Source: Okamejei kenojei (taxonomy: Eukaryota). Taken from it: a DNA stretch of 64,000 nt. The translations under genes were made by a program, and so were the position numbers. How positions within the stretch are numbered: the stretch's first letter is position 1; each line of letters starts with the position of its first letter. The notes under the pieces were generated by a model that was not told where the DNA came from, did not search any database, and saw only the letters and a list, made by a program, of their open reading frames with translations. Location of the stretch: contig CM069160.1 in the NCBI GenBank assembly GCA_035221665.1, forward strand, positions 1,116,001 to 1,180,000. The letters run 5' to 3'. Positions 2,546 to 26,833 of this stretch are shown here, in pieces.

Positions 2546-2664
2546 CCCGGCAACGATGACGCGTGAGGGACTAAGGCCTGTGATTGGGGAAGGCTGTAGG
2601 AAGTAAGATGACAGGTGACAATAGGCTTTCTGTTGGTTCCTGGTTTCACTTCTGGGGACTTTCC
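2546..2664 (+). promoter_or_regulatory. MHC-type regulatory module: X1/X2 box, Y box, ISRE and kB site
   Basis: CCCGGCAACGATGACG (2546), ATTGG 37 nt after the X start (2583), GGTTTCACTTCT (2642-2653), GGGACTTTCC (2655-2664). Confidence 0.7.
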
Positions 2665-3139
2665 AGCCAGATCCAGTTCCCATTGTCTGAACCAGAGTGA
2701 CTGGTTTGGACAAGGACAATCTTGCAGCTCAGGGGAGCAAGGAGATGGGAGAACATGTGAGCCTTGGGAAGACCAGAAAAGCTGCAGCAGAAACACAGCG
2801 GGTGAGGCAGCATCTATGCCGAGAAGATGGAATAGGCGACGTTTCTGGTCTAGACCTTCTTCGAGACCTTATGTCAGTCTGGGGAAATTATTGGAAAAAT
2901 ATATCTGAGGGACAATATTAATCCTCCCCTTGAGAAGGTAGAGATTAATCAACAGTCAGCTTGGTCTTGTTGGGTGGGAGATCCTGTCTGACAATGTAAG
3001 ACAGCACAGTCAATGTGGTTTAATGAGGTTTAGTAAAGCCTTCTGACAAGATTGCACATGCGACTTTGACTGGCCAATAGTTAGAGCCTGGTGGAACAGG
3101 GTAATGTGAGCTATTTGGATCTAAATTTGGCAGGTAATC

Positions 3140-3268
3140 AGACATTCCCATTTCCTCCACTGACCTTGCTGTTCTGGGCCTCCCCCCTTGTTAGCGTGAG
3201 TCCAAACGTAAATTGGGAGGAAACAGCACCTCATATTTTGCTTGGGTAGCTTAACAACCCAGCGGTTA
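3140..3268 (+). mobile_element. Penelope-like element GIY-YIG endonuclease C-terminal remnant
   Basis: Degenerate coding for ..DLAVLGL..C....RKLEEQHLIF.LGSLQPSG. Confidence 0.7.
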
Positions 3269-3269
3269 G

Positions 3270-4027
3270 GAAAAGGGGAGATGCAGCGAGATCTGGGAGC
3301 GAGAGTCAGTCATTGAAAGTAGGCATGCGGGTGCAGCAGGCAGTGAAGAAAGCGAATGGTATGTTTGCATTCATATCAAGCAAAGGAGATTTGAGTAAAG
3401 GAGCAAGGGAGGTTCTACTTCAGTTGTCCAGGGCCCTTGGTGAGACCACACCTGGAGTATTGCGTACAGTTTGGTTCTCCAAATCTGAGGAAGGAGCATT
3501 ATTGCCATAGAGGAAGTGCAGAGAAGGTTCACCAGACTGATTCCTGGGATGTTCAGTGGAAAAAAACTGTCTTATAAAGAAAGAACCGGATAGACTCGGT
3601 TTATTACTCTCTAGAATTTAGGAGATTGAGAGGGGATCTTATAGAAACTTTAACAAAATTCTTAAGGGAGTTGGACAGCTAGATGCAGGAAGATTGTTCC
3701 CGATGTTGGGAAAGTCCAGGACAAGGGGTCACAGTTTAAGTTTAAGGGGGACAATCCTTTAAGACTGAGATGAGAAAGACATTTTCACACAGAGAGTGGT
3801 GAGTCTCTGGAACTCACTGCCACAGAGTTGAGGCCAGTTCATTGGCTATATTTAAGAGGGAGTTAGATGTGGCCCTTGTGGCTAAAGGGATCAGAGGGTA
3901 TGGAGAGGAGGCAGGTACGGGATAACTTGAGTTGGGATGATCAGCCATGAATCATATTGAATGGCGGTGCAGGCTCGAAGGGGCCGAATGGCCTACTACT
4001 CCCGCATCTAATTTCTATGTTTCTATG
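3270..4027 (+). mobile_element. CR1/HER1-type LINE 3' fragment
   Basis: MKVGMRVQQAVKKANGM... RT C-terminus through to the 3' tail. Confidence 0.9.
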
Positions 4028-4814
4028 GTATGGAAAATGGACTTCTCTAACTTCAAGTAAACTCTTTTATCTCCTCTCTCTCCATCCCTTCCTCGCCCTA
4101 GTTTGTTATACCATTTTAACTGTCAACCTGCCCGTGAGTTCCATTGTATAACCCATTCTCACCTAACCTACACTTGTGGATCCCACGTTTCCTTGATTAA
4201 TTTGCATATATTCAATTCATTTTTCCTGTCCCTGGTTCCATCATGTCTCTTGTTCCCCTCTCTCCCATCATTTTGCCTGTGACCGGCCCCACCACCATGG
4301 TGTAATTTACAAACTTATAAAATGAGATTGGAGTTCGAGCCAAATTTAGCCGCTTAGTCGTGAGTGTATAGGGAATATATTTTGGGGGGACTGAGAATGC
4401 ATCTCTACGGGGCACCAATGTCCGAGAATTATTGTCGCCAACCCTCTCTGTTGGTGGTATTTTGTGGATCAGAAAAGCAATAATAACAACAAATTATTAT
4501 TGTTATTTGCACAATATTTGTTATTTATTCAAAAAAAAATTACCTGTTAAATACGATGTTTTACATATTCACATATCTGTTGTGCTGCAGCAAGTAAGAA
4601 TGTCATTGTCCCCGTCCAGGGACAAATGACAATAAAACTCTCTTGATCAGAGGCAGAGGAGGGTGTTTGATTCCCAGGTTCAAAGTTTGGTGATGAATTA
4701 GATATAGAATTTTGATGTTGAAGGTGTAGCTACAGTTAATAAATTGGAGTCTAATGTACGGAGGCCTTGTTGTCAGGGTTTTCCAGAGATTAGTTTATGA
4801 CCAGGGAGATGGTT

Positions 4815-5490
4815 TCTACCACTGTGTCCAACACACTCTCCACCCATCCAGACACTCACCACTGGTCCAGAACACTCACCACAGGGTCCAGACACTAGAC
4901 ACCCACTGGTCCAGACACTCGCCACTGTGTCCAGACACTCGCCACTGTTGTGCAGACACTCACCACTAGTGTGCAGACACTCGCCACTGGGTCCAGAAGA
5001 CACTCGCCACTGGGTCCAGACACTCGCCACCGGGCCCAGACACACCCCACAGGGCCCAGTACACTCGCCACCCGGCCAACACTCGACACTCGCCACCGGG
5101 TCCAGACACTCGCCACCGGTTCCAGACACTCGCCACCCACCGGGGTCCAGACACTCGCCACTGTGTCCAGACACTCCCACTGTGTCCCAACACTCGCCAC
5201 TGTGTCCAGAACTCGCCACCGGGTCCAGACACTCGCCAACCGGGTCCAGATCACTCGCCACCGGTCCGCCCCACACGGGTCCCAGACACTCGCCACCGGG
5301 TCCAACACTCGCCACCGGGTCTCAGAACACCGCGCACCGGGGTCCAGACACTCGCCACCGGGTCCAGACACTCCGCCACCGTCCAGAAACACTCGCCACC
5401 GGGTCAGGGACACTCGCCAGCGGGTCCAGACACTCAAGACATCTCGCCACGGGTCCAGACACTCGCCACCGTGTCCAGGGCCCCGCCACA
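4815..5490. repeat. Minisatellite, ~20 bp unit CCAGACACTCGCCACCGGGT
   Basis: Visible tandem copies; they account for the overlapping repetitive ORFs 4773-5696. Confidence 0.92.
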
Positions 5491-5559
5491 GAGGCTGCAC
5501 AGAAGGAGTCCAGTCACGAGCACTCCAGGGAAAAAGAGACGACAACCCAACATTGTTCA

Positions 5560-5602
5560 CCCGGAAGACTGGTGACGTTGCCCAAGGCTGGGCTGTGATG
5601 AG
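5560..5602 (+). promoter_or_regulatory. Degenerate X1/X2(-Y) module
   Basis: GTTCA-CCCGGAAGACTGGTGACG ... CTGTG-ATGAG; shares the GTTCACCCGG and CTGTGAT context with the 2546 module. Confidence 0.45.
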
Positions 5603-6739
5603 GGACGCCGTGTGTTGGCACCGGGCGATTTTACACCGGTGGTTTGGACCGCGTCTGTTTGTACCGCGGGTCTGTTCTCAGTCCCGAGACGCTTGACAGC
5701 TGACCTCCCCCCCCCTCCCCCCGACAATCCACAGCACACAATCACTGTAACCCTGTCAGTGCCGTGGAGCCTGTCCCCATATCCACGCACTCTCTGTTGT
5801 GCTAGAGCCAGGCCAAGGGGAAATAAAACAGGAAACATTCAGCAGGGCGGGCACGCTGTGAGATAGACAGTCATGTTCATAGCCATGACCTCACATCAGA
5901 GGCTGAGGAAAGTTAAGCAAGTTATAAGTGCTGAGAAAGAGGCGAACGGATATTACAAGTGGAGGGTGAATGCAGGTGAGGCCAGGGCCATGATCCCTGT
6001 TAAATCCCAGCTGAGCTGTCTGGGCTAAGTGTAACCCGGTGGAGATGATGTAAATAAGACAGCTTGAACTGAGAGAGTTTTTCTGGAAGAGTGAGATCGA
6101 AAGTGGAGATTAACGCAGATGTTTTAAGCTGAAATAAAAGATACGCTGGGTATACACAGCAGAGACGGGCAGCATCTGTGGGAAGAGAAAGATGCTTCAG
6201 GAGCCAATGTTCCGAATCATCACAGACTCAGTTTCTGATAAAAAGCAGGGAAAGATTGGTTATTTTCAGTCTGTCATCCGTGACGCTGCCCTGGGCTCCG
6301 CCCAGATGATGGGGTGCTACTCCCTGATTATGTTGGGATTCTAAAGCCAAGGTCAGTGAGGACAGAAGTGCCGAGTAGGACAGAGAATTAATGACAGGCA
6401 ACAAAAGCTTGAAGTCACCGCCCATCCTTGGTCACCGCTGTGAGCTGGCAGGTTGATTAACCCAATCTGTGTTCACGCTCCTCCAGTGAAAAATTGAGTG
6501 AGTGTACTAGACAGGAAGAGGTGCTCACGCATCGCTGCTTCAGCTGGGAGGAGGGTCCTCGTCAGTCCAAGGTGATACTAAAGCTAGGAGGGCAGCATGG
6601 CATTTTTCTATGGTTCCATAGGAATGTCCCAGGGGAAGGGAGTGGGTGTATGGTGGGAATGTTGAGACCAGAACAGGAGTCACACAGAGAGCAATCCCTT
6701 CATAAACTGAAACATTTTCGGAAGGTTGTCTAGGGCACT

Positions 6740-7170
6740 GAACGACACCTGTCCTGTGTACATACACCTGGTTACAGACCCTACACCAGTCCAGTGTATA
6801 CATACCTGGTCACTCGACCCTACACACCTGTCGGTGGTATACACATCTGCTCTCTGGCCCTACACCTGTCCTTGTGTACACACACCTGGTCACTGACCGA
6901 CACCTGTCCTGTGTAACACAACCTGGTCACTGACTGACACCTTCCTGTGTATACAACACCTGGGTCACAGACCGAACACCTGTCCTGTGTATCACACACC
7001 TGGTACACTGACCGACACCTGTCCCTTGGTACACACACCTGGTCACTGACCGACACCTAGCCTGGTGTAACACACACCAGGAGTCACTGGCCCTACACCT
7101 GTCCGGTGTGGCACACCTGGTCCACTGGCCCTCACACCTGACCTGTGTACACACCACCTGGTCCACCTGG
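6740..7170. repeat. Minisatellite, ~37-38 bp unit (ACACCTGTCCTGTGTACACACACCTGGTCACTGACC...)
   Basis: Visible noisy tandem copies. Confidence 0.85.
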
Positions 7171-7809
7171 GGTTGGTTCCTGTGTTTTATCACCGGGCAG
7201 GTGTTACGTGGGATGGAGAGGCAGTGGTGGTGCGAGCCTCATGAAGGGTGGTGTGTATTTTGGCGCTGTGGAGGTGGGGGAGGTGGCAGTCGATCTCACC
7301 TCTGACTGTGGGGTCGGGACTGCCCGCTCCGGGTGGAAACTATCAAGCGGCGCTCTCTGCCCCGGCGACTGCGACCGCTCCGTCGATTGTCTGTCCCGGG
7401 AGTGAACCCCCACATAGCCGGGCTCGTCGCCCAATAACCTTGTTCTCCAAACACATTTCTCTTAATTATCTGCTCTAAAACTAGATCCTATACTTCCGAT
7501 TGCCGACCCTTTTAATGCTTTCCGCACAAGGTCTAGCTTTGCTGGATAATTTAAACGGCGTTCCGTGAGGTGGGAACTGATCCCCGGACAACAATGTGTG
7601 GTTAGTTTGCCGCTGACAACTCCCTGAGTGATTCAGTGCTGACTTCGGCAGATTCACGCCGTGACCTCGAGCCACAAGTGGGTTGTCTGTCAGACTGACA
7701 TCTGTTGATGAATATGATTCTTAAAAAGCAGCCCGTTTGCTATTCTGGACTGTAACAGAAGCTGTCATTGCCCTGAGGGTTGAGCCCCGACGGTCCAACC
7801 TGTGAGACA

Positions 7810-8080
7810 GGGACTTTCCACAAAGCCGCTGGTCCAGCTGCACCAATCCAGGCTGCCCGCAGTTGTTGCCGGACAGGGATCAGTGCAGGGGCCGAAGGAA
7901 GCGGATCGGACATTCCTTCACGGTCCCTGCCTTGCAGCACTCCCTCACGCAGTTTAACACCGCCATTCAACTGCCCAGGAAGCAGCCGGAACCGAAGGCT
8001 TTGATGGAAAGTCCCTGCCGCAGGTCTGACCAGCCCGGGCCCAATTCCTCGGCTGATGCCAGCTCGGGGTGGAAGTTCCC
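7810..8080. promoter_or_regulatory. Cluster of three consensus NF-kB sites plus an X-like/CCAAT pair
   Basis: GGGACTTTCC 7810-7819, GGAAAGTCCC 8006-8015, GGAAGTTCCC 8071-8080; minus-strand TCCGGCAAC (7873-7865) with ATTGG (7847-7843). Confidence 0.6.
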
Positions 8081-8194
8081 CACAACACACAGAGCGGAAG
8101 CGGTCCAACAGTCCGAGCAGGGGAAGGGCGCAATGTTTTTCATAGAATCCTGCTAGACAACAGACAACGAAACACACACTTTGTCTTTGCAGAG

Positions 8195-9050
8195 ATCAGT
8201 AAATGTGGATAAAATGTGAGGTTATCCACTTGGTGGCAAAAACGAGAAAGCAGAACTATTATTTAAAATGTGGCCCGAATGAGGAAAAAGGGTGAGATGC
8301 AGCGAGACCTGGGTGTCCTGGATACACCATCATTGAAAGTAGGCATGCAGGTGCCAGCAGGCAGTGAAAATAAGCGAAAGGTATGTTTAGCTTTCATACA
8401 AAAGATTTTTGAATACAAGGAGCAGGGAGGTTCTACTTCATTGTACAGGTCTTGGTGAGACCACAAACCTGGAGTACTGACGTGCAGTTTTGGTCTTCCA
8501 AATCTGAGGAAGGACATTATTGCCCTAGAGGGAGTGCAGAGAAGTTCACCAGACTGATTCTTGGGATGTCAGGACTGTCCTTATGAAGAAAAGACTGGAT
8601 AGACTCCGGTTTATACTCTCTGGAATTTAGGAGATTAAGAGGGGATCTTATGAAACTTACAAAATCATAAGGTTGGACAGCCTAGTAATGCAGGAAGATT
8701 GTTCCCGATATTGGGGAAACCAGGACAAGGGTCCACAGCTTAAGGATAAGGGGGAAATCCTTTAAGAACCGAGATGAGAAAGACCTATCTTCACACAGAA
8801 GTGGTGAGTCTCTGGACTCTCCTCCACAGAGGTAGTTGAGGCCAGTTCATTGCTATAATTTAAGAGTGAGATTGGATGTGGCCCTTGTGGCTAAGGGGAT
8901 CAAGGGTATGAGAGAAGGCAGGTACGGGGATAGCTGAGTTGATGATCCATCAGCCATGATCATATTGAATGGCGGTGCACGGCTCGAAGGCTGAATGGCC
9001 TACTCCTGCACTAATTTCTAATTGTTTCTATGTTTCTATGTTTTCTATGT
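8195..9050 (+). mobile_element. CR1/HER1-type LINE 3' fragment
   Basis: KCEVIHFG..KGEMQRDLGVL.. through a (tttctatg)n tail. Confidence 0.9.
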
Positions 9051-9414
9051 CTTCACAGGTGTTGCCTGAACCGCTGAGTTTCCCCAGCAGCTTTTTTTTT
9101 TTTTTGCAGAAGGCCCTTCGGCCCATCTCGTCTATGCTAAACAAGGTGCCTTCCTCTCAGCTCGTCCATGTCCTGCGTTAGGCCCATATCCTTAGCTATC
9201 TTTTCCCATCCATGTCCAAATGTGTTTTAAACCAAAAGATCCTATAGCGGAGCTTGCTATTGGATCTTTGGTTGTAACTGCTGTAAATTGTGTTCACCTC
9301 TTCCATTATGTCCTTCTGTGTGAAAAATTGCCCCTCGGATTCTTTTCTCACACTGTTTAGTTTTAGACGCCCCTACTCTGGGAAAACCATTGTGATTTAT
9401 CTTTCCTATGGTTT

Positions 9415-9952
9415 AGACAATAGACAATAAGGTGCAGGAGGAGGCCATTTGGCCCTTCGAGTGCAGCTCGCCAGCATTCAATGTGATCATGGCTGATCAT
9501 CCCCAATCAGTTCCCCGTTCCTGCCTTCTCCCCATATCCCCTGACTCCGTTATTTTTAGAGCCCTATCATAGTCTCTCTCTTGAAAGCATCCAGAGAACC
9601 GGCCTCCACCGCCCTCTGAGGCAGAGAATTCCGCAGACTCATCACTCTCTGTGAGAAAAACGTTGTTTCCTCGTCTCCATTCTAAATGGCTTACTCCTTA
9701 TTCTGAAACTGTGGCCACTGGTCAGGACTCCCCAACATCGGGAACATGTTTTCATGCCTCCAGCGTGTCCAAACCCTTAACAATCTTATATGTTTCAATA
9801 AGATCCCCTTCATCCTTCTAAATCCAGAGTGTACAAGCCCAGCTGCTCCATTCTCTCAGCATAACAGAGTCCCGCCATCCCGGAATTAACCTGGTGAACC
9901 TACGCTGCAACGCACACCCTCAATAGCAAGATGTCCTTCCTCAAATTAGGGT
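9415..9952 (-). mobile_element. CR1/HER1-type LINE 3' fragment
   Basis: Reverse complement of the same 3' end with (agacaat)n tail. Confidence 0.9.
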
Positions 9953-10609
9953 ATCCTTGATGATTTTATAAATCTCCATCATGTCATCCCTCACCCCTCC
10001 TCTACTCCAGGAAAAATAGTCCAGGATGGTGGAAGGTTGCTTTCACCCGAACGTGGAAGCTTGTGACTAATGGTTGTGTCTAAGGGTTCGGTGCTGGGCG
10101 CAGACTTTACTTGTCTTCTCCAATTCTACATCAATGATTTGGGTGATGAACCGTACAGGGCATCATTAGCAAGTTTATAACTGAAACAAAAGTGGGTGAT
10201 ATTGCAGTTGGTGAAGATGCATTGCAGCAAGATCTTGATCGGTTGGGCAGGTGGCCTTAGCAATGGTTCATGGAATTTTTAAATACAGAGAAATGGGAGT
10301 GGTTGCAATTTGGGAAGGCTAACATTGGGCAGGACCACACAGTGAATGGTAGGACTCAGGGGGAGTGTTGTAGAGAGAGAGGGATATTGCAGTGCAGGTA
10401 CATAGTTCATTGAAAGCAGCATCACAAGTAGATAGTATGTGGTCAAAAAGACTTTTGTCACATCAGTTAAATATTGAGTACAGAAACTGGGACGGTCCAT
10501 GTTGCAGCTATATAAGACATCGATGAGGCTCATTTAGAGTACTGAGTTCAGATCTAGGCACCTAAGATTGTGACTGGATGTAAATGAACGTGTCCCAGAA
10601 TATCTTGAA

Positions 10610-15455: not shown

Positions 15456-16504
15456 AATGCGTGGGTTTCTTCTGGATGCTCTGGTTTCCGCCCATATCCC
15501 AAAGACTTGTGGGTTGGTGGGTTAATTGACCTCTGTAAATTACCCTGCTGCGTGGGTGAAGGGTGGAATCTGGGGAGAGTTGAGGAGAATGTGGGGAGAA
15601 TAAAACAGGTTAGGGTAGAATTGGAATATGGTAGTGACGGTGGCAGAGACTCAATGACCGAAGGGCCTGTATCTCTGACTGGATGCCTTTGTATCCCAGG
15701 CATTCTATGAAGAAGCCATTGAGGTAGGGAATGACGGATGGCGATGTACATAGGGAAGCCAAACACAGCAGATGCTGTAAATCTGAAATAAAACAGGAAA
15801 CGGTGGAAACCCTCAGCCGGTCAGGCAGCATCTGGGGAGGAAAGAACAGAACTAATGTTTCAGCTTAAGACAGACACAAAAAGCTGGAGTATCTCAGCGG
15901 GACAGGCAGCATCTCTGGAGAGAAGGAATGGGTGACGTTTCCGCTCGAAACCCTTCCTCCGCTTGACAGTATTTCATCCAAATACATTGCCCACTTCAAC
16001 ATTCAAACAGCTTTCAACTTTCACACAGCACTTCTGTTCGAGATCTTCTCAATGAACACCAAAGTGGTGCTAATACATGGAACTGGATGTACGAAGAGTT
16101 GGAAGATACCAGGGGTTTTGAATATATTTGGAATCAGACTACCAGATCCGTGTGGGACATTGGTCTCCACAGTTTAATACTGACCCAGTGGCATGGGATA
16201 CATGTTTCAATGCCCCCTTAATCTCTGCTGACCAGGACTATGAATAAAATCCTCGATATTCACTCCGACAATTTCAGATAACCAGATTTATAGTCTGTGT
16301 TGGGACAGTAAGATCAGCCACTGTAACATTTGTTTAGAGTTCCTCTTCCCACAGCCGATGCCTGAGTCGCTGGGGATTTCCAATGTTCCCCTTTATTTCT
16401 AGGCCACAGAAACAAATTCTACCCGGCAACGGGTGACACACTGCAGCCGCGCCCATTTCTTTGTAAACTGATGATGGCAAGCAAGTTGTATACATTCATT
16501 ACCA

Positions 16505-17060
16505 CCCTATCACAAGTTCACAAGTGATGGGAGTAGAATTAGGCCATTCGGCCCATCGAATCCGTCATTCAATCATGACTGGTCTCTGCCTCCTAATCTC
16601 ATTTTCCTGACTTCTCCCCAAAACCTTTCACACCCATTCTAATCAAGAACTTGTCTATCTCTGCCTTAAAAATATCCACTGACGTGGCCTCCACAGCCCT
16701 CTGTGGCAATGTGTTCCACAGATTAACTACTCTCTGACTAAAGAAGTTCTTCCTCGTCTCCTTTCTAAAGAGGGCCTTTAATTCTGCACCTATGACCTCT
16801 GGCCCAAACCTTCTCCCACCAGTAGAATACATCCTCTTCATATCCACTCTAGTTATGCCTTTCATTATTCTGTAAGTTTCAATGAGGTCCCCCCTCAACC
16901 TTCCAAACTCCAGCGAGTAGAGGCCCAGTGCTGTCAAACACTCATCATATGCTAACCCACTCATTCCTGTAAATTTCCTCTGGACCCTCTCCAGAGCCAG
17001 CACATCCTTCCTCAGATATGCAGCCCATATTTGCTCACAGTAATCCAAATGCGGCCTGGT
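16505..17060 (-). mobile_element. CR1-type LINE 3' fragment
   Basis: ORF 16599..17048 YLRKDVLALERVQRKFT..FFSQRVVNLWN. Confidence 0.9.
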
Positions 17061-17480
17061 CAGTGGAGCCCCTCAACATTACATTTCCGTGTTGGCACTG
17101 ACAGGCAGCTATGGCATTGACCTCCAGGGTCCCTATGTCCATCACAGGCAGGTGCTGCCATATAACGTGTGCTGGATGTGGATGTGGGGGTAGATGGGTG
17201 GCAGATCGACCTGTGACAGGCGGGGGCAGATGGGTGGGAATGGGTGAGGAGAGGATAAGCGGTAGACAATGATCCGGACTCGGTGGGACAAGGTGGGACA
17301 GGGATGGAGGGGCTGCATGGAATTTTGTCCGGAGATGCCGGTGTGCTTCCCGGGATTGGGAGCGAGGAGATCTGGTTCAGACGGGACACTGGGGGAGGGG
17401 TTGGCTGTAAAATCGGCAACAGCAGAGAAACAGCGTGCAGCCTCTCAAACCACAGGCTCACTAACATGGGGAATAAGCAA

Positions 17481-17522
17481 CCAATGAAAAGGCGAGGCTA
17501 CCATGTGTCATCTGTTGCCGGG
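17481..17522 (-). promoter_or_regulatory. X1/X2-Y module (duplicon copy B)
   Basis: CCCGGCAACAGATG + 23 nt + ATTGG, the same geometry as the mammalian HLA-DRA X-Y module as recalled. Confidence 0.7.
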
Positions 17523-20500
17523 TAGGATTTGTTTCTGTGGCCCGTTTGGGACCTGAGAGGTTTCACCCTTCAGTTGTTGATGCAGCAGATGTGTCTGAGG
17601 GAGGGGTAAATAGAGGAGGTGAAAGAGGGCAGGGGAGAGGAGTAAATAATCGTGGGAGGGACTCACCGCAGATGCTGGAAATCTGAAATAAAGGAGAATG
17701 TTGGAAATCCCTTGTGGGTCAGAAGGATTGAAGAGTTGCGAATTGTGAAGCCAGAGGAAAGGATGTTGGTGGAAGGGAAGGGGAGAAATAGGCACGAGTT
17801 TGGGTCGGCACAGGAGGGGAGGGGGGTAGAAAGTGGATGTGGGGAGAGGGACGGGCCATGTTACATGTTAGTTAATATTCAACCTTTATACCATTGAGTT
17901 CTGAGCTGCCCGAGCGGATTATGAGATGCTGTTCCTCTAGTTGATGTCTGCCCTCACTCTGGCAATGAACAAGGCCCACGACAGTGTTAGCTCAGTATGG
18001 GAATTAAAATGGTTCGCCACCACGACATAACCGGACAGACTTGATGCACAGAACGGTGTGTTCTTCATCCTCCCTGGCGTTTCCACCATATCCCTCTTCG
18101 GTTTTATATTTCACTGCTTTCCTGCCCTCATCTAATACTCTTTTGTTTCCTGTTCATCTCTAGCCTTTGTCACTTACCCCAACCATCTGCATCTGCCCAT
18201 CATTTGCCAGGCTTTGTCCACTCCCACCTCCTACTCCACTGAGTTTCTCCAGTATTTTGATCTTAGACAGGGTTGAGAGTCAGAGCCTTTTCCCCAGGAT
18301 GGAAGTGATAAATAGCATTGAATGTATTGCGTTAAGATGAGAGGGGGAATGTTTGGAGGATATTTACAAGGTAGGCTTTTCACTCGGAGGACGGTAGTTT
18401 CCTAGTATGTGTTGCGAGATGAGGTGGTGGAAACAGATATGACAGCAACATCTAAGAGACATTTTCAGGCACATGAACAGGCTGGGAATGCACAGATATA
18501 AAGCATATGCAGACAGATAGGATTAATTATCCACACAGACATGGTGGGACAAATGGCCTGTTCCTGTGCTGTATTGCCCACTGACCCACTTCCACCACAC
18601 TGTCCCCCTCACATAATCCTTCACCCACCCACTCCTCTGCCCTTGCCAAGTGCTGGCAATTGGGTTTGGTAATGATCGTACCTGATGGTTGGCATAGAAA
18701 TGATCGGCCAAAGGGCGCGCTACTGTGTTATATGACTATAATCCATGACTACGGCTAATTTCAGATAACCAGCCGTTCCAGTTTGTGTTGAGACTGGTTG
18801 TGTTGTAAGATCATCCACTGGAACATTAGTTCAGGATTCCTCGCCCACAGCTGCTGCCTGACCTGCTGGGGATTCCCAACATTTTCCTTGATTTCAGGTT
18901 TCCAACATCTGTGGCGTTGTCACTCTCATAGTTCTGACATCCTTATTTACCTCTCTCCCCTGTCCTCCTTCACCTCCTCTATTGACCCCTCCCTCAGACA
19001 CATCAGCAGCATCAACAACCGAGGGACAGTCTCTGCAGACCCGGGACTGGGGGTGAAACAAATCCTACCCGGCAACGGGTCACACGCAGTAGCCGCAACA
19101 TTTCTTGCCACCTTTTATACTCAGTGGCGCGACTGAAGATGTCAAGCATGCTTTACGCACTTTTCACCGTCCCATCACATTGTGTTGGCACTTTCAGGCA
19201 GCTATGGACTTGCAGCACATGGTCCACCTGGCCAGCACTGCCAGGGTCCCATCATTTAATGTGTGCTGGATGTAGATGTGAGGAAGGGTGGGGGTAGGTG
19301 TTCGACCTGTGACAGGCGAGGGCTGAGGAGAGCATAAACAGTAGACAATGATCCAGCGGGTGGGTGTGGGGAGGGAAGGGCAATGTGGGACAGGGACGGA
19401 GGGGCTGTACGGGACTTTGTCCAGAGTTGCTGGTATGTTCCCAGAATAGGGAGAGGAGATCTGGTTCAAACAGGTTGACTGCAAACAGCAGAGACATAGA
19501 CTGCAGCCTCTCAAACCACAGGCTCAATAACATCGGGAATAAACAGCCACTGAAATAGTACGGCTACGTGTGTCACCTGTTGCCGGGTAGGATTTATTTC
19601 TGTGACCTGTTTTGAAGGCGGGAGGTGTCACCCTCAGTCCCGGGCTGCAGAGACCGCCCCTCTGTTGTTGATGCAGCGGATGTGTCTGAGGGAGGGCTAA
19701 ATAGGAGGTGAAAGCGGGCAGGGGAGAGGAGTAAATAAGGACGTCGGAATCGTGGGAGGGGCTCCGCAGGTGCTAGAAATCTGAAATAATGGAGAATGTT
19801 GGAAATTCCTAGTGGGTCAAAAGGATTGTAGTTGTGAATTGTGAAGCCAGAGGAAAGAGGTTGGTGGATGGGGAGGGGAGAGAGAGGTGCGAGTATAGAT
19901 GGGCAGAAAGAGGGGGAGAAAGTGGGCAAGGGGAGAGGTAGTTCGGGGTTGTTCGAGGTTAGCTAATATTGGCGAATTCAATGTTTATGCCCAAGCAGAA
20001 TATGTAGTGCTGTTCCTCCAGTCTGTGCGTGCCCCACTCTGGCAATGGAGAAGGTCCAGGGCAGAAAGCTCAGTTTGGGAATGGGAATGATAATTAAAAT
20101 GGTTTGCCACCTCGAGAGGCTGTCGAGCATGGCGCACTGAGTGTGTGTTCCCCTTCCTCCCCTGGGGTGGGTGGCTGATCGACTGTGACAGGTGATTACA
20201 GAGGGGTAGCTGTGTGGGTGGGGAGATACTGTAGGCAATGATCCAGACGGTGGGGTGGGGAGGGAAGGACAAGGAGGGGTTGTTTGTGGGAGTGGGAGGG
20301 AGGGAGGGAGGTACTGCACGGGACATTGTCCGGAGATGCCGCTGTGTTTCCTGGAATTGGGAGAGGGATCTGATTCAGATGGGGGGAGGGGTTGGCTGGA
20401 AAATCGCCAACTACAAGAAGCAGAGAAACTACAAGAGTGCAGCCTCTCAAACCTCAGGCTGACTTACATGGGGAATAAACAGCCAGTGAAATTGTAGGCT

Positions 20501-21244
20501 ACAGCGTGTCACCTGTTGCCGGGTAGGATTTGTTTCTGTGGCCCGGTTGGGACCAGGGAGGTTTCACCCCCAGTCCCGGGTCTGCAGAGACCCCCCCCCA
20601 ATGTTGTTGATGCAGCTGATGTGTCTGAGGGAGGGGTAAATAGAGGAAGCGAAGGAGGGCAGGGGAGAGGGGTAAATAAGGTAATCTGAAACAAATGAGA
20701 CGGCTGTGAATCCCTTGTCAAAAGCATTGAAAAGTTGCGAATTGTGAAGCCAGAAGAATGTAGTTGGAGGGGAGAGGAGAAATAGGTGTGAATCTAGTTA
20801 GGGGGGAGGGGTGTGGGTAGAAAGGGGGTGTGGGGAGAAAGAGGTGGTTTTGTTAGAGGTTACCAAAAGTTGGAGATCTGAGTGTTTATACTGTTGGGTT
20901 GTAAGCTATCCAAGCGAAATATGAGATGCTGTTCCTCCAGTTTGTGTTGCCTCACTCTAGCAATGGAGGAGGCGCAGGATAGATGGGTCAGTATGGGACT
21001 GGAAGGAGGAGGAATTAAAATGGTTAGCAGCTCAGAGATCTGGCAGACTGAACGCAAGAGTTCTGTGAAAGGGTCACTGAGTTGGAGGTAGCAGAAATGT
21101 CAGAGAAAGATGTGTTGGAAGCGGCTGCTGATGGGGTGAAAGGTGAGGAACAGGGGAACTCTGTCCTTGTTCTGTCCAGGGGGAAGGGAAGCAAGACCAG
21201 GACTAAGGGACACAGGAGATATGAGTGAAGGATCAATCTATTGT

Positions 21245-22290
21245 TATTTCCAGAAATAAACTTTATTTAAAATAAAAAAAATATATACAAAACAAGAACA
21301 GTGCACAATTTCTTATGACAGTCTCAGCGACGATGCATTCCTTTGGTAGTGTTCACAGAACTATTTTAATACTAGGCACCCTTACCACTCTTACTGCCCT
21401 CTGGGGTGCTCTCCCTTCCCTCGTTTAAGGGACATCTCATCATACCCTGCCCTCCCAATGTTCAGCAGCTGAAGGATCCTGGACTGTGGTCCTCCCCCAC
21501 AGAGTCTTGATGTTGGCTGCACCAAGCTTCAGTGCGTCCCTCAGCAATCTGGATCAGGCCAGTAGCCAACATTCCCTGATGGACATTACACTCTGCAAGG
21601 TGATCAGCAAGTTTCGATCAGACCAAAGATCGTCTTCCACAGAGTTGATGACCTTCCAGTACCACTTGATGTCCATCTCCGAATGTGTTCCTGGGAGCAG
21701 TCAATAAATCATCGAGTCCTCTGTTAAGGAGCTGTACGGGATAAATCGTGACCGGGACCCTTGAATCATTCTACAGACTCTTCACAAATCCACACTCTGG
21801 GAAAGGATGGGCACCCATCTCTTCTCCATAGCAGCCGCCCCAAGGACAGCGTGCGCTGGTAGTAAGGTTCCGACGGTGCAGGAAGGATCTGTCTAGGAGA
21901 CCCCTTGAGGCATTTCACCAGACAAGCTGGGCAGTCTGTTGGGGAACCACGCCACAGCATCCATCCAATCCTTTTCCCGCAATGTCTGCAGGATGTTCTC
22001 TGCTGACCGCTGCCTGATAGTCTGGTGGTCAAGGGTGTTGGTCTGAAAGAACCTTTCCATGAAGGACATTGTGCGGCATCTTTGCCAGGCCCATCCTTCT
22101 CAACGCCAGGGTCAGAGGGAACCTCAGCAGATCATGACACTTAGTGCCCACGTGCTCACATGCTTTGCCACTACACACAGCCTGATGCAGTCACACACAA
22201 AGATGGCCTTCAGGATGAACACTTGTTGGCCCACAGAGTAGTCACACAACAGGTGGCAGAAAAACTGGTCAGTGAGGGGGTGGAATGTCA
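21245..22290 (-). mobile_element. L1/Tx1-type LINE 3' fragment
   Basis: A/T-rich tail at about 21250-21290 and degenerate Cys/His-containing post-RT coding sequence. Confidence 0.55.
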
Positions 22291-23830
22291 GAAGTGATAG
22301 GAGCAGAATTAGGCCATTCAGCCCATGAAGTCTACTCTGCCATTCAATCATGGCCGATCTATCTCTTCCTTCTAACCCCATTTTCCCCATAGCCCTAGAC
22401 ACCCGTACTAATCAAGAATCTATCTATATCTGCCTTAACAATATCCATTGATGGCCTCCACAGCCGTGTGTGGCAAAGAATTCCACAGATTTACCATCAT
22501 CTGTCTAAAGAAAATCTTCCCCATCTCCGTCCGAAAGGAACGTTCTTTAATTCTGTGGCTATGACCTCTAGTCCTAGACTCTCCAACTAGTGGTAACATC
22601 CTTACCACATTCAATCTATCCAAGCCTTTCACTATTTGGAAAGTTTCAATGAAGCTCCCCCCCCCTGCCTCCCCCCACTCCTCACCCCCCCCCCCCACCC
22701 CCCTGGGGCCCCTCCCCCCCCCCCCCCCCTCTAAACTCCAATGCGTACAGGCCCAGTGCTGTCAATATACTCATCATATGTTAACCCACTCATCCCTGGG
22801 ATCACTCCGGTAAACCTCCTCTGGACCTTCTCCAGAGCCAGCACATTCTTCCTCAGACTGGCTCCATCCATTCCTTTGATTCAAATAAAAGTGTCCAAAA
22901 TTGCTCACAATACTCCAAATGTGGCCTGAGCATCACTTCATCAGCATTACATCCCTGTTTTTGTATTCTAGGCCTCTTGAAATGAATGCTAGCATTGCGT
23001 TTGCCTTCCCTACTACCGATTTGAAATCCTGTCCCAGCACTTCCAAGTCCATTGGCACTTCTGAATTCTGGATTCTCCCCACATTTAGAAGACTCCACAC
23101 TTTGCTACACGGTATTCCATCTGCCACTTCTCTGCGCACTCTCCCAACCTGTCCAAATCCTTCTGCAGAGTTCCTGCTTTCTCTATGCTACCTGCCCCTC
23201 CACCTATTTTCGAACTCCGCTAGTCACTGGTGGCCAACCAGAAAAAGCCCCTTTATTCCCTCTCTTTGCCTCTGCCATCCAGTCAACCTGCTACCCATGC
23301 TAGCATCTGCCCTTTGATATCATGGGCTCTCATCTTAGCAGCCTCACACATGGCACCTTATCAAATAAAATCTTGGTAAACAACATCTACTGACTCTCCT
23401 TTGTCTGTCCTGCTGTTTACTTCTTCAAAGAATTCCAGAAGATTCATCAGGCAAGATCTCCCCTTCACAAAACCACGCTGACTTTGGCCTATTTTATCAT
23501 GAACTTCTAAGTACTCCGTAACCCCATCTTTATAATGGACTAAAATCTTGCCAAACACTGAGTCAGACTAACCAGCCTATAGCTTCCACTGTGTAGAAAA
23601 GAACTGCAGATGCTGGTATAAATCGAAGGTAGACACAAAATGCTGGAGTAACTCAGTGGGTCAGGCAGTATCTCTGGAGAGAAGGAAGGAATGGGTCAGC
23701 ATCTCTGGTCAGCCTATAGTTTCCACTGTTCTACTTTGCTCCCTTCTTGTACAGCTGAGTAATATTGGCAATTTTCCAATCATCTGGAACCATTCCTGAC
23801 TCCCGTGATTATTGATATATCACTATTACG
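22290..23830 (-). mobile_element. CR1-type LINE fragments (RT region and 3' end)
   Basis: ORF 23361..23558 GQSQRGFVKGRSCLMNLLEFFEEV..VDVVY; 22435..22698 SRTRGHS. Confidence 0.85.
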
Positions 23831-23834
23831 TGGG

Positions 23835-25010
23835 CCACAGAGTAGAGGCATTGATGGGCTTTCATTCTGGTTTTGTCAAAGTGCTGGGCCCACGACAGAT
23901 CTACAGATATATACACGCGCAGGAACTTGATGTTGTCTTCTCCCTCCTTTGATGAAAAAGACAGGTTAGTGGATCCTTGGCCATCCTCTTCTAAAGTCAA
24001 CAATCAGCTCCTTGGTCTTATTGATGTTGAGAGCAACATGGTTGTTCTGTCACCATTCAATCAGATAATTGATCGCCCTCCTATACTCTGATTCATCTTT
24101 ACCCGTAATTCCTCCATCAATGATGGTGTCGTCAGCAAATTGAACGATGGAGTTGGAACTGTATCGGCTACTCAGTCATGGATATAATGTGGTTAGGGCA
24201 GGGACTCAGCATGCAGCCTTGAGGTGTTCCTGAGCTACCTAATGGTTATTGAGGAGGAAGTGTTGTTGCCAGTTTGTGCTGTGTTGATGAGGAAATCAAG
24301 GATCTAGTTGCAAAGGATATTGCAGAGACAGTTCCTGGAACTAAGTAACAAGATTGTGGGGAATGATGGTGTTGAATGCCAAGCTGTAGTCAATGAACAA
24401 TATCCTGATGTATATGTTATTATTGCCTAGTTGGTCCTACACAGAGTGGAGAACTAGCAGGTTCACATCCCCCATAGATCTATTGTAGCTGCTCCAGTGG
24501 GTCCAGGTTCCTGCTGAGATAGTTAATATGTTCCACAATGAACCTCTCAAAACACTTCATCCCCACAGACGTTAGTGCCAACGTTGCCATATGTCATTGA
24601 GACATGTCACGTTACTCTTCTTGGGCCTATCATTATCAATGACCTGTTAAAGCAGGCGAGAACCTTAGACCTCAGTATTGAGAGGTTGCAGATGTCCACA
24701 AAATCTCCAGCGAGTTGGTCCGCGCAGGTTTTGAGAACATGACCACAGGGGCATGTCCAGGAACAAAGGCTGCAGAAAGTGGCGGACATTGTCAGGCCTT
24801 TCACGGGTACTGATCCCTCCCCCAAACATCAAACTGAACTTCAGGTAGCTCAGCCTCAAAAAGGCAGCAAGTATCATCAAAGACTGACACCATCCTGCCA
24901 TGCTCTCATCTCCCTGGTGCCGTTGGGTAGAAAGTTGAGAATCGTTACTTCCAGCTTCAAGAGCAAGAAGCTTCTTCCCTTAGACATTGCACCACACTAA
25001 CCACAACCCT
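23835..25010. mobile_element. Old Rex1/Babar- or L2-like LINE fragments in both orientations
   Basis: Minus-strand FADDT-type RT motif near 24125-24145; LKTCADQLAG.F.DI.NLS at 24607..24825. Confidence 0.6.
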
Positions 25011-25253
25011 ACCTCAGCAACAATGATCTAATATGGACTGTGTTTGGTTCCACTGCTGACTTCAGATTTACACTTTGATCAGTTTTGCAATTACTGATTA
25101 TTAATGTATTGTACAATTATTTATGTTGCTGCGTTAATGGGCTGATAAAGCTGCAGGAAGTGGGAATTCCATTGTTCCATTGTCAGTACATATGGGGTTA
25201 AAACACACTTGACTTGTTTCTTTATCCAAAAAAGGTTTCAGAAATAAATCCTA

Positions 25254-25295
25254 CCCGGCAACAGGTGACAAACTGTAACCACACTGCTGCATTGG
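25254..25295 (+). promoter_or_regulatory. X1/X2-Y module (duplicon copy F)
   Basis: CCCGGCAACAGGTG + 23 nt + ATTGG (25291). Confidence 0.7.
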
Positions 25296-26793
25296 CTAGT
25301 TTTGCTAGTTTGTTGGCCAGCGACGTGAGAGGTTTACTTTGTTTCTCTACTGCCTGGAGTTGGTGATTTCCCAGACAAACCCTCCCCCACTGAGCCATCT
25401 GAACGAGCTCTCTGACTTCATGAAACCCTCTCAGCGCCTGGGATGGCCACTGGTCCCTCACAAGCGCCCCCTCGCTCTTCCCTTCCTCACCCACCCCACC
25501 TCTGGATCATCATACTGTATGTGTTCTCCTCACCCTGACTGCCACCCTCTCCAGCACCCTGCAAATCCCTGGTTTGTGATCTCCATTCGCCATAAACTAT
25601 ATCCTTTGTCCTCCTCGCACCACGGCCACCATATGGATCACCTGCCGCTGTTTCTAATTCCACACCCTCTGCCCATTGCCCACTGTTCAACTATACCCCA
25701 GCACCAACCACCATTTGCACTCATACCACGGTTCAATTTCAGTATACCAGACGTTCAGTTTGTGCCGGTTACTGACAGGTACTAATTAAATTCATCCATT
25801 GTACTTCAGCATCAGTCACCACCTTTAACCTGCTGGGCTTCCAACCTTCTCCGTTAGTTCTAGTTCTAGTTCACATCCAGAGGAAGAATATGTCAGGTAT
25901 ACATTGCTTATGAGAGCAAGCAATTCCTTGGGAGCAGATGCGATGTAGGAGTGCACTAAAAAATCAGGAGGGACACAAATTATCTTGGCAGATATGTCAT
26001 CGAACATTCCATGAGATTCTACGTGTACATTAACAGGGGATGGAAAAAAGTTAAACTTGGGAGATCTCTCCTTATCTAAACACCTTCTTGTTTTCTTTCA
26101 CTTCTAGCTTTTGTTGAAGGTAGAATGAAAGAACTGCAGATGCTGGTTAAGCTCAAATGGACACAAGTACTTGGTGTAACTCAGCAGGTTAAGCTAGCAA
26201 CATGGAGAAAATTGGATCGATGATGTTTCTGTCAACACGTTCTTTGATAGATTTGTAATTGAGGGGAGGAAGGGGTAGAGCAATGGGCAGGTAGACACAG
26301 GTGAGGGGAGGTTTGGGAAGATAGATGATTGGAACAAAAGGCCAGAGATAAATACAGAAGGTGTGAGACGAGTTTTGAAGATTCTTTTGTCACTTTCTCC
26401 AACCATCCATCAATCACCACCTTCACCTGTATCCACCTGGCACTTGTCCATCTTTGTCCCGCCCTCATGTCTCTTTTCCAGCTTTCTACACCCCACAACA
26501 ATCAGATGAAAGAAGGGTCGCAACCAGAAACGTCATCTGTCCATTCCCTCCACAGATGCTGTCTGACCCACTGAGTTCCTCCAGCACTGTTTTGAGTTTG
26601 AGTTTAGTTTATTGCGACATGTACTAAGGTACAGTGAAAAGCTTTTGTGTGCTAACCAGTCAGCGGAGAGACAATACGTGCGTTATTATGTTCCCCTTTC
26701 GCTGCCATCCTTCACCTCTATTTACCACTCCCTCAGATACAGATGATCTCTACGAATCCTAGTCCCAAAAACAGACTTCAAAAAACCATCCTA

Positions 26794-26833
26794 CCGGCCA
26801 ACAGATGACAAAGTACAGCCGCGCCTTCATTGG
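26794..26833 (+). promoter_or_regulatory. X1/X2-Y module (duplicon copy G)
   Basis: CCGGCCAACAGATG + 21 nt + ATTGG (26829); flanks 26690-27000 homologous to copies B, D and E. Confidence 0.6.

What the first reader, a model, noticed from the sequence alone, without database searches (positions are those of the whole stretch)
2546..26833. Array of at least nine MHC enhanceosome-like X1/X2(-Y) modules 3' of an MHC class I gene: candidate locus-control or super-enhancer region
Seen: the motif CCCGG(C/A)A(A/G)C-N-(G/A)TGAC, with small variants, recurs at 2546(+), 5560(+), 16422(+), 17522(-), 19068(+), 19587(-), 20523(-), 25254(+) and 26794(+). An inverted CCAAT (ATTGG) starts exactly 37 nt after the X start at 2546, 17522 and 25254, and 35 nt after it at 26794. 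One-mismatch versions (AGTGG, ACTGG) sit at 36 nt for 19587 and 20523. The 2546 module has unrelated flanks and spacer, yet keeps the same spacing. The same architecture occurs twice at the class I promoter (39682-39827). Known: MHC I and II promoters use X1 (RFX5), X2 (CREB/ATF) and Y (NF-Y) boxes at fixed spacing to recruit NLRC5/CIITA; the HLA-DRA module as I recall it is CCTAGCAACAGATG + 23 nt + ATTGG, and distal X-Y enhancers exist in the mammalian class II region. Inference: a multi-copy distal enhancer array for a cartilaginous-fish class I gene, or for another antigen-presentation gene beyond the left edge. I found no leader exon downstream of the modules and no convincing S box. A 500-N gap separates the array from the gene.
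Basis: partly seen in the sequence, partly recalled or inferred. Interest (0 to 1): 0.9.

Follow-up and report, generated by a model that had tools for sequence, protein, structure and literature searches.

The report
Locally duplicated MHC X-box-like sites
Downstream of a cartilaginous-fish MHC class I gene, one short stretch resembling the X-Y switch of MHC gene promoters has been copied seven times by local duplication and inversion, so this is one ancestral site in seven copies, plus two unrelated promoter-like sites, not nine independent enhancers, and any role in controlling the gene is untested.

Summary
The motif sites are real, but there are not nine independent modules. Seven of them (16422+, 17522-, 19068+, 19587-, 20523-, 25254+, 26794+) are paralogous copies of one composite segment of about 0.9 kb, spread by tandem and inverted local duplication. 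So this is not a genome-wide TE. Two other organisms carry the same copies at about 6% mismatch.

Within the family, X1 (CCCGGCAAC) and TGAC are much better kept than the unit average (3/91 deviant cells against 19%). The CCAAT box is intact in only 3 of 7 copies. No S box sits at the canonical distance, there is no ISRE or kB companion, and CpG content is at background.

Sites 2546 and 5560 are a different type. They resemble the two modules of the class I promoter and lie in CpG-rich patches. Site 2546 also has an ISRE-like site and a perfect kB site.

An a-priori X-Y pattern is expected 0.03 times per window and occurs as two independent events. The locus-control or super-enhancer reading is untested, and linkage to the gene crosses a 500-N gap. 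Another first-stage note (s1-880582) had already read this same stretch as a module amplified by duplication and inversion.

The parts
2546..2587 (+). A-type X1-X2-Y module: CCCGGCAAC-GA-TGACGCG, 22 nt, ATTGG. Its flanks are unrelated to the repeat family. It sits between inverted copies of an abundant short repeat (2308-2399 and 2773-2867).
2642..2664 (+). ISRE-like GGTTTCACTTCT directly followed by a perfect kB site GGGGACTTTCC. This is the only such pair beside any module.
5560..5603 (+). Degenerate A-type module (CCCGGAAGAC-TGG-TGACG ... CTGTGATGAGG) with no CCAAT. It shares GTTCACCCGG, TGACG and GG.CTGTGAT with 2546. It lies in a CpG-rich patch at the right edge of a 20-bp-period minisatellite (4833-5435).
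16401..16463 (+). B-type fragment: a 62-nt island of homology with X at 16422-16437 and no Y. It is the inverted partner of 17480-17542.
16510..17020 (-). LINE 3' fragment (RT-tail ORF) inserted between the 16422 fragment and the 17522 copy. Extremely high copy number.
17041..18010 (-). B-type long copy. X at 17507-17522, Y (ATTGG) at 17481-17485, distance 37.
18858..19104 (+). B-type inverted partial copy. X at 19068-19083 (TCAC variant). Homology ends before Y.
19141..20088 (-). B-type long copy. X at 19572-19587; Y decayed to AGTGG (19547-19551).
20166..21005 (-). B-type long copy, in tandem with the previous one (X to X 936 bp). X at 20508-20523; Y decayed to ACTGG (20483-20487).
25224..25547 (+). 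Older B-type copy. X at 25254-25269 (16/16), Y (ATTGG) at 25291-25295, distance 37. 7 of the 21 spacer positions differ from the consensus.
26685..26992 (+). Older B-type copy. X at 26794-26809 (CCGGCCAAC variant), Y (ATTGG) at 26829-26833, distance 35.
27382..27881 (.). 500-N assembly gap between the array and the class I gene. Not filled or examined.
29858..39597 (-). MHC class I gene, from the leader ATG to the stop of the ORF that carries the alpha-3-like piece; any TM or cytoplasmic exons further 3' were not mapped. The leader ATG (39594-39592) is 1 nt out of frame with a signal-like peptide. Alpha-1-like sequence at about 33.1-33.3 kb, alpha-2 at about 31.9-32.1 kb, alpha-3-like at about 29.9-30.2 kb. 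The exons are frameshifted in this assembly.
39682..39827 (-). Class I promoter with two approximate X-Y modules. P2: X at 39710-39725, then ATTTGG. P1: X at 39812-39827, then ATTGC. P2's Y-like motif ends 88 nt upstream of the ATG. CpG-rich.

Best explanation
The 'array' has two components. (1) Seven B-type sites are copies by descent of one ancestral X1-X2-Y-like site. That site lay in about 400 bp of low-copy DNA next to TE fragments. The composite unit of about 0.9 kb was then multiplied in place by tandem and inverted segmental duplication, 3' of a class I gene, before this species split from at least two relatives. This part is shown. I infer that the ancestral site was a genuine MHC-type regulatory site, not a chance match. 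It shares CCCGGCAAC, TGAC, ATTGG and the 37-nt X-to-Y distance with the unrelated site at 2546, and as far as I recall with HLA-DRA. Since duplication, only the X half (an RFX-type half-site plus TGAC) has been kept in all copies. The CCAAT box survives in three copies, and no S box, ISRE or kB site accompanies any of them. The most likely present state is therefore a cluster of X-box-like sequences, comparable to the 'X box-like' sequences scattered through the human class II region. These could dock RFX, and perhaps CREB/ATF. At most the copies at 17522 and 25254, and possibly 26794, could still add NF-Y. The rest are decaying relics. This is not a built-for-purpose locus control region. (2) Sites 2546 and 5560 are a separate A-type that resembles the two modules of the class I promoter itself and lies in CpG-rich patches. 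Site 2546, with an ISRE-like site and a perfect kB site 55-70 nt further on, looks like an orphan class I-type promoter or enhancer.
For: Shared descent: BLAST, MAFFT and nhmmer show 250-970 bp of homology around the core in five copies and 62-247 bp in the two inverted fragments. Not a TE: at 80% likeness or more, the summed contig depth in the core bins is 17.8-23.7 in run X1, against about 15 in neighbouring single-copy bins. The LINE reaches 1.5e5 to 1.1e6 and the short-repeat and TE pieces 1e4 to 4e5. The three other runs show the same picture. Age and reality of the copies: single contigs from a second sample and from organisms B and C cover individual copies at about 6% mismatch (table 8). 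X half kept: X1 has 2/63 and TGAC 1/28 deviant cells, against 0.19 overall, 0.21 in the spacer and 0.19 in the X1-X2 gap. The window AATCCTACCCGGCAAC ranks 2nd of 317. The X1 CpG is kept in 6/7 copies, against 47% for other consensus CpGs. More than chance: the a-priori pattern is expected 0.03 times per window and occurs as 2 independent events. Site 2546 against the 17522 copy gives a local alignment z of 8.3 despite unrelated flanks. A-type kinship: the 2546/5560/P2 alignment shares GTTCACCCGG, TGAC and GG.CTGTGAT at one spacing, with z of 6.4 and 4.8. CpG o/e is 0.68-0.80 for the A-type sites and promoter, against 0.23-0.59 for B-type. [quoted passage not shown]
Against: No binding, chromatin or expression data exist here. 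An unrelated block (-116 to -94, probably TE-derived) is conserved as well as X1, so uneven conservation need not mean function. Averaged over the whole 42-nt module, identity equals that of the flanks. In B-type copies the X2 part is only TGAC(A/G)C, a weak CRE half-site, and it overlaps an E-box (CAGGTG or CAGATG) that could equally be the conserved element. The S-box consensus of cartilaginous fish is unknown, so 'no S box' rests on the mammalian form as I recall it. The HLA-DRA 37-nt X-to-Y distance is also from memory; only the X-box string was verified.
Confidence: 0.5

Rival explanations
1. One reading: the copies form a selected multi-copy distal enhancer cluster (locus-control or super-enhancer type). 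It would assemble RFX-CREB-NF-Y enhanceosomes, recruit NLRC5 or CIITA, and drive the adjacent class I gene or another antigen-presentation gene.
For: X1 and TGAC are kept in 7/7 copies after about 20% divergence. The two oldest copies (25254, 26794) keep both X and ATTGG while their spacers diverge. The array is retained in two other organisms. Distal S-Y enhancers that work in either orientation are known in the human class II locus (PMC1802633). The location is right next to a class I gene.
Against: Y is lost or absent in 4 of 7 copies. No S box lies at the canonical distance, and in mammals the S box is essential and the spacing strict (PMC4374748). There are no ISRE or kB partners. CpG content is at background. 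Multiplicity is explained by segmental duplication of a unit that also carries TE junk. Linkage to the gene crosses a 500-N gap. The gene itself is frame-disrupted in the assembly.
Confidence: 0.25
2. Chance resemblance: a neutral piece of DNA that happened to contain an X-Y-like string was duplicated seven times. The apparent motif conservation reflects uneven mutation, gene conversion or alignment anchoring.
For: All seven sites count as one event. Whole-module identity equals flank identity. Another block is equally conserved. Y conservation is unremarkable, rank 88 of 328.
Against: The a-priori pattern is expected only 0.03 times per window, yet a second, non-homologous instance (2546) has the same 9-mer, TGAC, ATTGG and the same 37-nt distance. 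That instance is flanked by an ISRE-like site and a perfect kB site. The setting is an MHC class I locus. The best-conserved low-copy block coincides with the RFX-type half-site.
Confidence: 0.2
3. The core belongs to a dispersed, genome-wide transposable-element family, so the motif recurs simply because the TE recurs.
For: The unit contains TE pieces. Profile positions 3-300 recur at 3145, 12267 and 35900 next to LINE tails, and positions 294-351 are the tail of an abundant short repeat. The depth of those parts is 1e3 to 4e5.
Against: The core-bearing bins 17400-17599, 19400-19599 and 20400-20599 are at about 1-2x single-copy depth in all four runs, even at 80% likeness. The core-bearing part of the profile is found nowhere else in the 64-kb window.
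Confidence: 0.03

Closest known systems
Distal S-Y (S'-Y') enhancers of the human MHC class II locus and Ii gene (DRAe, #2, #4, #6, #8; Krawczyk et al. 2004 as cited, with binding data in PMC1802633 Table 1)
   Same: X-Y composite sites lying kilobases from the promoters, inside the MHC, in either orientation, with the promoter-type X-to-Y phasing.
   Different: The human modules each have all four sub-elements (S, X, X2, Y) and proven RFX and CIITA occupancy. They are also not paralogous copies of one duplicated segment. Here no S box was found, Y is intact in only 3 of the 7 B-type copies, nothing is known about binding, the neighbour is a class I gene, and the host is a cartilaginous fish.
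X box-like (XL) sequences of the human MHC class II region (Gomez et al. 2005, cited in PMC2278383; XL9 in PMC2292219)
   Same: Isolated X-box-like strings scattered between MHC genes. Some retain regulatory function without being complete S-X-Y promoters. This matches the pattern here, with the X half kept and the rest not.
   Different: XL sequences are dispersed single sites, and XL9 acts through CTCF. Here the sites are a tight cluster made by tandem and inverted duplication, and no CTCF-type motif was seen at the core by eye.
Promoter-proximal SXY module of MHC class I and B2M genes (NLRC5 enhanceosome; PMC4374748)
   Same: Site 2546 and the promoter modules P1 and P2 have X1, a TGAC(G) X2 and (for 2546) CCAAT at promoter-like spacing. 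Site 2546 also has ISRE-like and kB sites, the usual class I companions.
   Different: At 2546 the ISRE and kB sites follow the Y box instead of preceding the S box. No S box or downstream leader exon was found. P1 and P2 lack a true CCAAT in this assembly.
Class I duplication blocks of mammalian MHCs (segmental duplications carrying gene fragments and TEs)
   Same: Local, repeated duplication and inversion of a composite unit of unique DNA plus TE pieces beside a class I gene.
   Different: No class I exon or promoter relic lies in or beside the units. The unit is only about 0.9 kb.

Membership tests
MHC S-X-X2-Y enhanceosome module | X1 box: RFX-type half-site (GCAAC, as in CCTAGCAAC of HLA-DRA) | tested here: met
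   CCCGGCAAC at 2546 and in 6 B-type copies, CCGGCCAAC at 26794. The 17522 copy shares GCAACAGATG 10/10 with the DRA X-box probe in PMC4806502. Site 5560, P1 and P2 deviate by 1-3 bases.
MHC S-X-X2-Y enhanceosome module | X2 box: CRE-like site (TGACGC/TGCGTCA type) abutting X1 | tested here: inconclusive
   TGACGCG at 2546 and TGACGT at 5560 are good half-CREs. B-type copies have only TGAC(A/G)C, with TCAC at 19068, and this overlaps an E-box.
MHC S-X-X2-Y enhanceosome module | Y box: inverted CCAAT (ATTGG) at fixed distance from X (20-22 bp between motifs in PMC4374748) | tested here: inconclusive
   Met at 2546, 17522 and 25254 (21-22 nt from TGAC to ATTGG) and nearly met at 26794 (19 nt). 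Not met at 19587 (AGTGG), 20523 (ACTGG), 16422 and 19068 (homology lost), 5560, P1 (ATTGC) and P2 (ATTTGG). Among paralogues the Y columns rank 88 of 328 for conservation.
MHC S-X-X2-Y enhanceosome module | S (W) box about 16 bp upstream of X, essential for CIITA/NLRC5 recruitment | tested here: not met
   No GGACCC-type string at -23 to -17. The nearest look-alike, GGTCCCA, lies at -31 to -25 in two copies and is not conserved in the others. Caveat: the mammalian S form is from memory and the cartilaginous-fish S consensus is unknown.
MHC S-X-X2-Y enhanceosome module | Occupancy by RFX, CREB and NF-Y, and CIITA/NLRC5-dependent activity | not testable with these tools
   No ChIP, ATAC or reporter data. 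No listed run is on record as RNA, three runs are only guessed to be RNA, and none of those was laid.
Dispersed transposable-element family | Many copies genome-wide | tested here: not met
   Core bins are at 1-2x single-copy depth at 80% likeness or more in four runs, against 1e4 to 1e6 for true TE parts of the same stretch.
Dispersed transposable-element family | Element hallmarks (terminal repeats, target-site duplications, coding capacity) | tested here: not met
   No Pfam hit in unit ORFs and no Rfam hit. The inverted arms are partial copies of the unit itself, not termini. Target-site duplications were not searched for systematically.
Local segmental (tandem and inverted) duplication | Paralogous copies with homology extending well beyond the motif, clustered at one locus | tested here: met
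   Three copies of 840-970 bp at 78-79% identity, two of them in tandem. There are also inverted partial copies and two older copies, all within 16.4-27.0 kb.
Locus control region / super-enhancer | Clustered active-enhancer chromatin, long-range contact with and control of target promoters | not testable with these tools
   No chromatin or 3C/Hi-C data. Adjacency to the gene crosses a 500-N gap.

The most novel reading that the evidence does not exclude
A cartilaginous-fish class I locus carries a cluster of distal RFX/NF-Y enhanceosome-type sites, made by segmental duplication and kept by selection. Together with an orphan X-Y/ISRE/kB module (2546), it would act as a shadow or super-enhancer for antigen-presentation genes. 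The X-Y pattern with its 37-nt phasing, and the use of distal S-Y-type enhancers, would then predate the split of cartilaginous and bony vertebrates.
Probability: 0.2. Interest if true: 0.75.

Novelty: new variant of a known kind. Interest (0 to 1): 0.45.

Why it matters
In the library I could search, nothing describes the cis-regulatory grammar of MHC genes in cartilaginous fishes, the oldest lineage with an MHC. If the X-Y-like sites here bind RFX and NF-Y, the enhanceosome architecture, down to its helical phasing, is about as old as the MHC itself. It would also mean that orphan or distal copies arise readily through the segmental duplications typical of class I regions. That gives a concrete set of about ten short sequences to test by ChIP or reporter assay. 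If they do not bind, the locus is a useful caution: one motif copied by duplication can look like an enhancer array.

Tried and rejected
(1) The dispersed-TE explanation was rejected by contig depth. (2) Relics of duplicated class I genes: tblastn of every stop-free piece of the gene against the window found only LINE/TE fragments, with no exon relic outside 27.9-39.8 kb. The promoter and leader have no paralogue. (3) Coding or RNA function of the unit: no Pfam hit for unit ORFs and no Rfam family in 1-27381. The ATG just after the Y box is not conserved as an ORF across copies. (4) ISRE and kB companions of B-type copies: none found. The kB-like strings at 16372 and 18868 belong to the abundant short-repeat tail. 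(5) Cross-species footprinting from the differences table of read laying: only 40 of 784 differences were printed. The three that fall in the 17522 module all lie in the spacer, which is too few to test. (6) My recollection that the human B2M promoter has the order SXY, then ISRE, then kB (as at 2546) could not be verified in the paper I opened, so it is not used as evidence. (7) Literature on SXY modules in sharks or teleosts: nothing relevant in the library. (8) The scan-notes search by sequence was blank. One word search failed on its term. (9) Simple Ig-C1 regexes found no further MHC or B2M-type exon in the window, but they also missed the frameshifted alpha-3, so this is a weak negative. 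The N runs were left untouched and nothing was searched for them.

Full report
WHAT IS THERE. Reading all nine places directly shows that seven of them share a slightly different core, CCCGGCAAC-(A/G)G(G/A)-TGAC. These are 16422+, 17522-, 19068+, 19587-, 20523-, 25254+ and 26794+. They also share their flanks, for example ...CACAGAAACAAATCCTA before the core and ...GTAGCC... after it. A pattern that allows the extra base finds 8 of the 9 sites, against 0.01 expected in simulated sequence. Site 5560 does not match and has no CCAAT.

SEVEN SITES ARE ONE SITE COPIED. Self-BLAST, MAFFT and an nhmmer profile show the following. There are three long minus-strand copies (17041-18010, 19141-20088, 20166-21005) at 78-79% identity; the last two are in tandem, X to X 936 bp. 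There are two inverted partial copies on the plus strand (18858-19104 and a 62-nt island at 16401-16463). There are two older plus-strand copies (25224-25547, 26685-26992). The inverted arms were confirmed independently.

The unit is a composite. Profile positions 3-300 also occur at 3145, 12267 and 35900 next to LINE tails. Positions 294-351 are the tail of an abundant short repeat. The core-bearing part (about 360-850) occurs only between 16.4 and 27.0 kb in this window. A LINE fragment (about 16510-17020) was inserted into one super-unit later.

NOT A GENOME-WIDE TE. I laid Logan contigs from two samples of the same organism and from two other organisms on 16200-22199 at 80% likeness or more. 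Summed contig depth in the bins that hold the cores was 23.7 (17400-17599), 19.5 (19400-19599) and 17.8 (20400-20599) in run X1. Neighbouring single-copy bins gave about 15, and the other three runs showed the same proportions. In the same stretch the LINE reached 1.5e5 to 1.1e6, and the short-repeat and TE pieces 1e3 to 4e5. So the core-bearing DNA is low-copy and specific to this locus.

Single contigs from organisms B and C span individual copies with about 6% mismatches, for example 17028-17603, 19183-19591 and 20045-20520. The duplications therefore predate the split of these organisms, and the copies are not assembly artefacts.

IS THE MOTIF CONSERVED BEYOND ITS FLANKS? Averaged over the 42-nt module, pairwise identity equals that of the flanks: 0.63-0.93 inside against 0.64-0.85 outside. 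Column by column the picture is sharper:
- Deviation from consensus is 0.19 per cell overall.
- X1 is 0.03 (2/63 cells) and TGAC is 0.04 (1/28).
- The X1-X2 gap is 0.19 and the 21-nt spacer is 0.21.
- The Y box is 0.115, rank 88 of 328, which is unremarkable.

The 16-column window AATCCTACCCGGCAAC ranks 2nd of 317. However, a block at -116 to -94 is kept equally well. It lies in the high-copy bin and is probably TE-derived. The CpG inside X1 survives in 6 of 7 copies, against 47% for other consensus CpGs. ATTGG is intact only at 17522, 25254 and 26794. In copy 25254 the X and Y motifs match the consensus 21/21 while the spacer matches 14/21. So the X half looks constrained and the Y half does not, but these tests are post hoc.

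TWO MODULE TYPES. Sites 2546 and 5560 share nothing with the repeat family outside the motif. They do align with each other and with the promoter-proximal module of the class I gene. Sites 2546 and 5560 share GTTCACCCGG, all three share TGAC, and all three share GG.CTGTGAT at one spacing. Local-alignment z-scores are 6.4 (2546 against 5560) and 4.8 (5560 against P2).

These A-type sites and the promoter lie in CpG-rich patches (o/e 0.68-0.80; window 90th percentile 0.68). Every B-type copy is at background (0.23-0.59; median 0.39). Only 2546 has companions: GGTTTCACTTCT (ISRE-like, 2642-2653) followed directly by GGGGACTTTCC (a perfect kB site, 2654-2664). I found no leader exon beside 2546.

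MORE THAN CHANCE? A pattern set beforehand by the known mammalian arrangement, GCAAC-N1-3-TGAC-N15-24-ATTGG, is expected 0.03 times per 64 kb. It occurs three times, which is two independent events: 2546 and the family. Site 2546 and the B-type core share the 9-mer, TGAC, ATTGG and the 37-nt distance while their flanks and spacer are unrelated. The copy at 17522 shares GCAACAGATG 10/10 with the HLA-DRA X-box probe printed in PMC4806502. The DRA X-to-Y distance of 37 nt is from my memory and was not verified. PMC4374748 gives 20-22 bp between the X and Y motifs and stresses that spacing is critical and the S box essential. I take this as good evidence that the ancestral B-type site was, or derives from, a real MHC-type X-Y site.

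THE NEIGHBOURING GENE. Class I exons lie on the minus strand, so the array is 3' of the gene. Alpha-1-like sequence is at about 33.1-33.3 kb, alpha-2 at about 31.9-32.1 kb and alpha-3-like at about 29.9-30.2 kb. The alpha-2 piece's best solved-structure hit is 6lup_A 'MHC class I protein' (E = 1.6e-8), followed by many class I heavy chains. Pfam MHC_I reaches only E = 0.0015, below its cut-off.

The exons are broken by several frameshifts. The leader ATG (39594-39592) is one base out of frame with a signal-like peptide. This could be a pseudogene or indel errors in the assembly; I could not tell which. The promoter modules P1 and P2 are approximate and lack a true CCAAT (ATTGC and ATTTGG). P2's Y-like motif ends 88 nt upstream of the ATG. 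A 500-N gap (27382-27881) separates gene and array. I left it untouched, so their adjacency rests on scaffolding.

INTERPRETATION. What is shown: one ancestral site was amplified by local tandem and inverted duplication; it is low-copy genome-wide, old, and shared with relatives. What is inferred: the site is of MHC X-Y type, and since duplication only the X half has been maintained. No S box lies at the canonical distance, there are no ISRE or kB partners, and CpG content is at background.

My best reading (0.5) is a cluster of X-box-like sequences, mostly relics. Two or three copies (17522, 25254, perhaps 26794) could still assemble X plus Y factors. Sites 2546 and 5560 are a separate, promoter-like type. 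The selected enhancer-array or locus-control reading remains possible (0.25). Pure chance is less likely (0.2), and the TE reading is essentially excluded (0.03).

COMPARISON WITH WHAT IS KNOWN. The nearest precedents are in the human class II region. One is the set of distal S-Y enhancers, which bind RFX and CIITA and work in either orientation (PMC1802633). The other is the X box-like sequences (cited in PMC2278383; XL9 in PMC2292219). The sites here differ in five ways: they lack S, most lack Y, they are paralogous copies of one duplicated unit, they sit beside a class I gene, and the host is a cartilaginous fish. The searchable library holds nothing on SXY modules in that lineage.

EARLIER SCAN NOTES. 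Note s1-880582 had already read this same stretch as a module amplified by local duplication and inversion, with seven copies. My analysis confirms the duplication and adds the copy-number and conservation tests. Notes s1-880258 and s1-880058 report SXY-like promoters at a class I gene and a B7/butyrophilin-like gene elsewhere in this genome. I could not see those sequences, so they remain leads.

LIMITS. All sequencing runs were available only as contigs, so the depths are sums of contig word depths, not copy numbers, although the contrast spans four to five orders of magnitude. No RNA or chromatin data were usable. I did nothing with the endogenous retrovirus at about 52.7-59.3 kb beyond noting it.

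Noticed in passing
window 2546-2664: An orphan 'class I kit': X1-X2-Y, then an ISRE-like GGTTTCACTTCT, then a perfect kB site GGGGACTTTCC, all within 120 bp. It lies in a CpG-rich patch between inverted copies of a short repeat (2308-2399 and 2773-2867). No leader exon was found on either side. The element order (X-Y, then ISRE, then kB) differs from mammalian class I promoters. Also flagged by note s1-880517.
   Followed up: partly
window 29858-39597 (-): The class I gene's alpha-1, alpha-2 and alpha-3 exons are each split by frameshifts, and the leader ATG is 1 nt out of frame with a signal-like peptide (CSVCVLLLLAALLCGGES). This is either a pseudogene or indel errors in GC-rich sequence. 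P2's ATTTGG could be the same kind of error for ATTGG.
   Followed up: partly
window 7810-8080: Three kB-consensus strings (GGGACTTTCC at 7810+ and 8015-, GGGAACTTCC at 8080-) within 270 bp of a CpG-rich, GC-rich stretch (7.2-8.2 kb). Also flagged by note s1-880636.
   Followed up: partly
window 4833-5435 and 6736-7163: Two GC-rich minisatellites (period 20/41/62 bp and period 38/79/153 bp) with CpG o/e up to 0.86, immediately left and right of site 5560.
   Followed up: no
window 5790-5838 (-): A minus-strand ORF starts with a signal-peptide-like MFPVLFPLGLALAQQ and is followed by a possible GT donor. This may be a leader exon of an unannotated gene, or it may be chance.
   Followed up: no
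window 52681-59303: An endogenous retrovirus. Identical 92-aa ORFs at 52681-52959 and 59025-59303 mark the two LTRs, and env-like ORFs lie at 56886-58655. Observed only; nothing was built or compared.
   Followed up: no
window 39954-40358 and 48921-50477: A 21-bp tandem repeat (GATTCCTGGGATGACCAGACT type) lies just upstream of the class I promoter. A long tandem array further on encodes repeated 'HCYGQHILPLHM'-like ORFs on the minus strand.
   Followed up: no
window 28333-31173: An extremely GC-rich (0.61-0.76), CpG-rich (o/e up to 1.44) proline-codon low-complexity tract fills the 3' part of the class I gene region, with open frames of 360-446 aa on the minus strand.
   Followed up: no
window 16200-22199, runs X6 and X9: Other organisms (B-G) hold 8-16% of the 31-mers of the 16-26 kb stretch. 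B and C have orthologous contigs at about 6% mismatch, so material exists for proper phylogenetic footprinting of this locus.
   Followed up: partly
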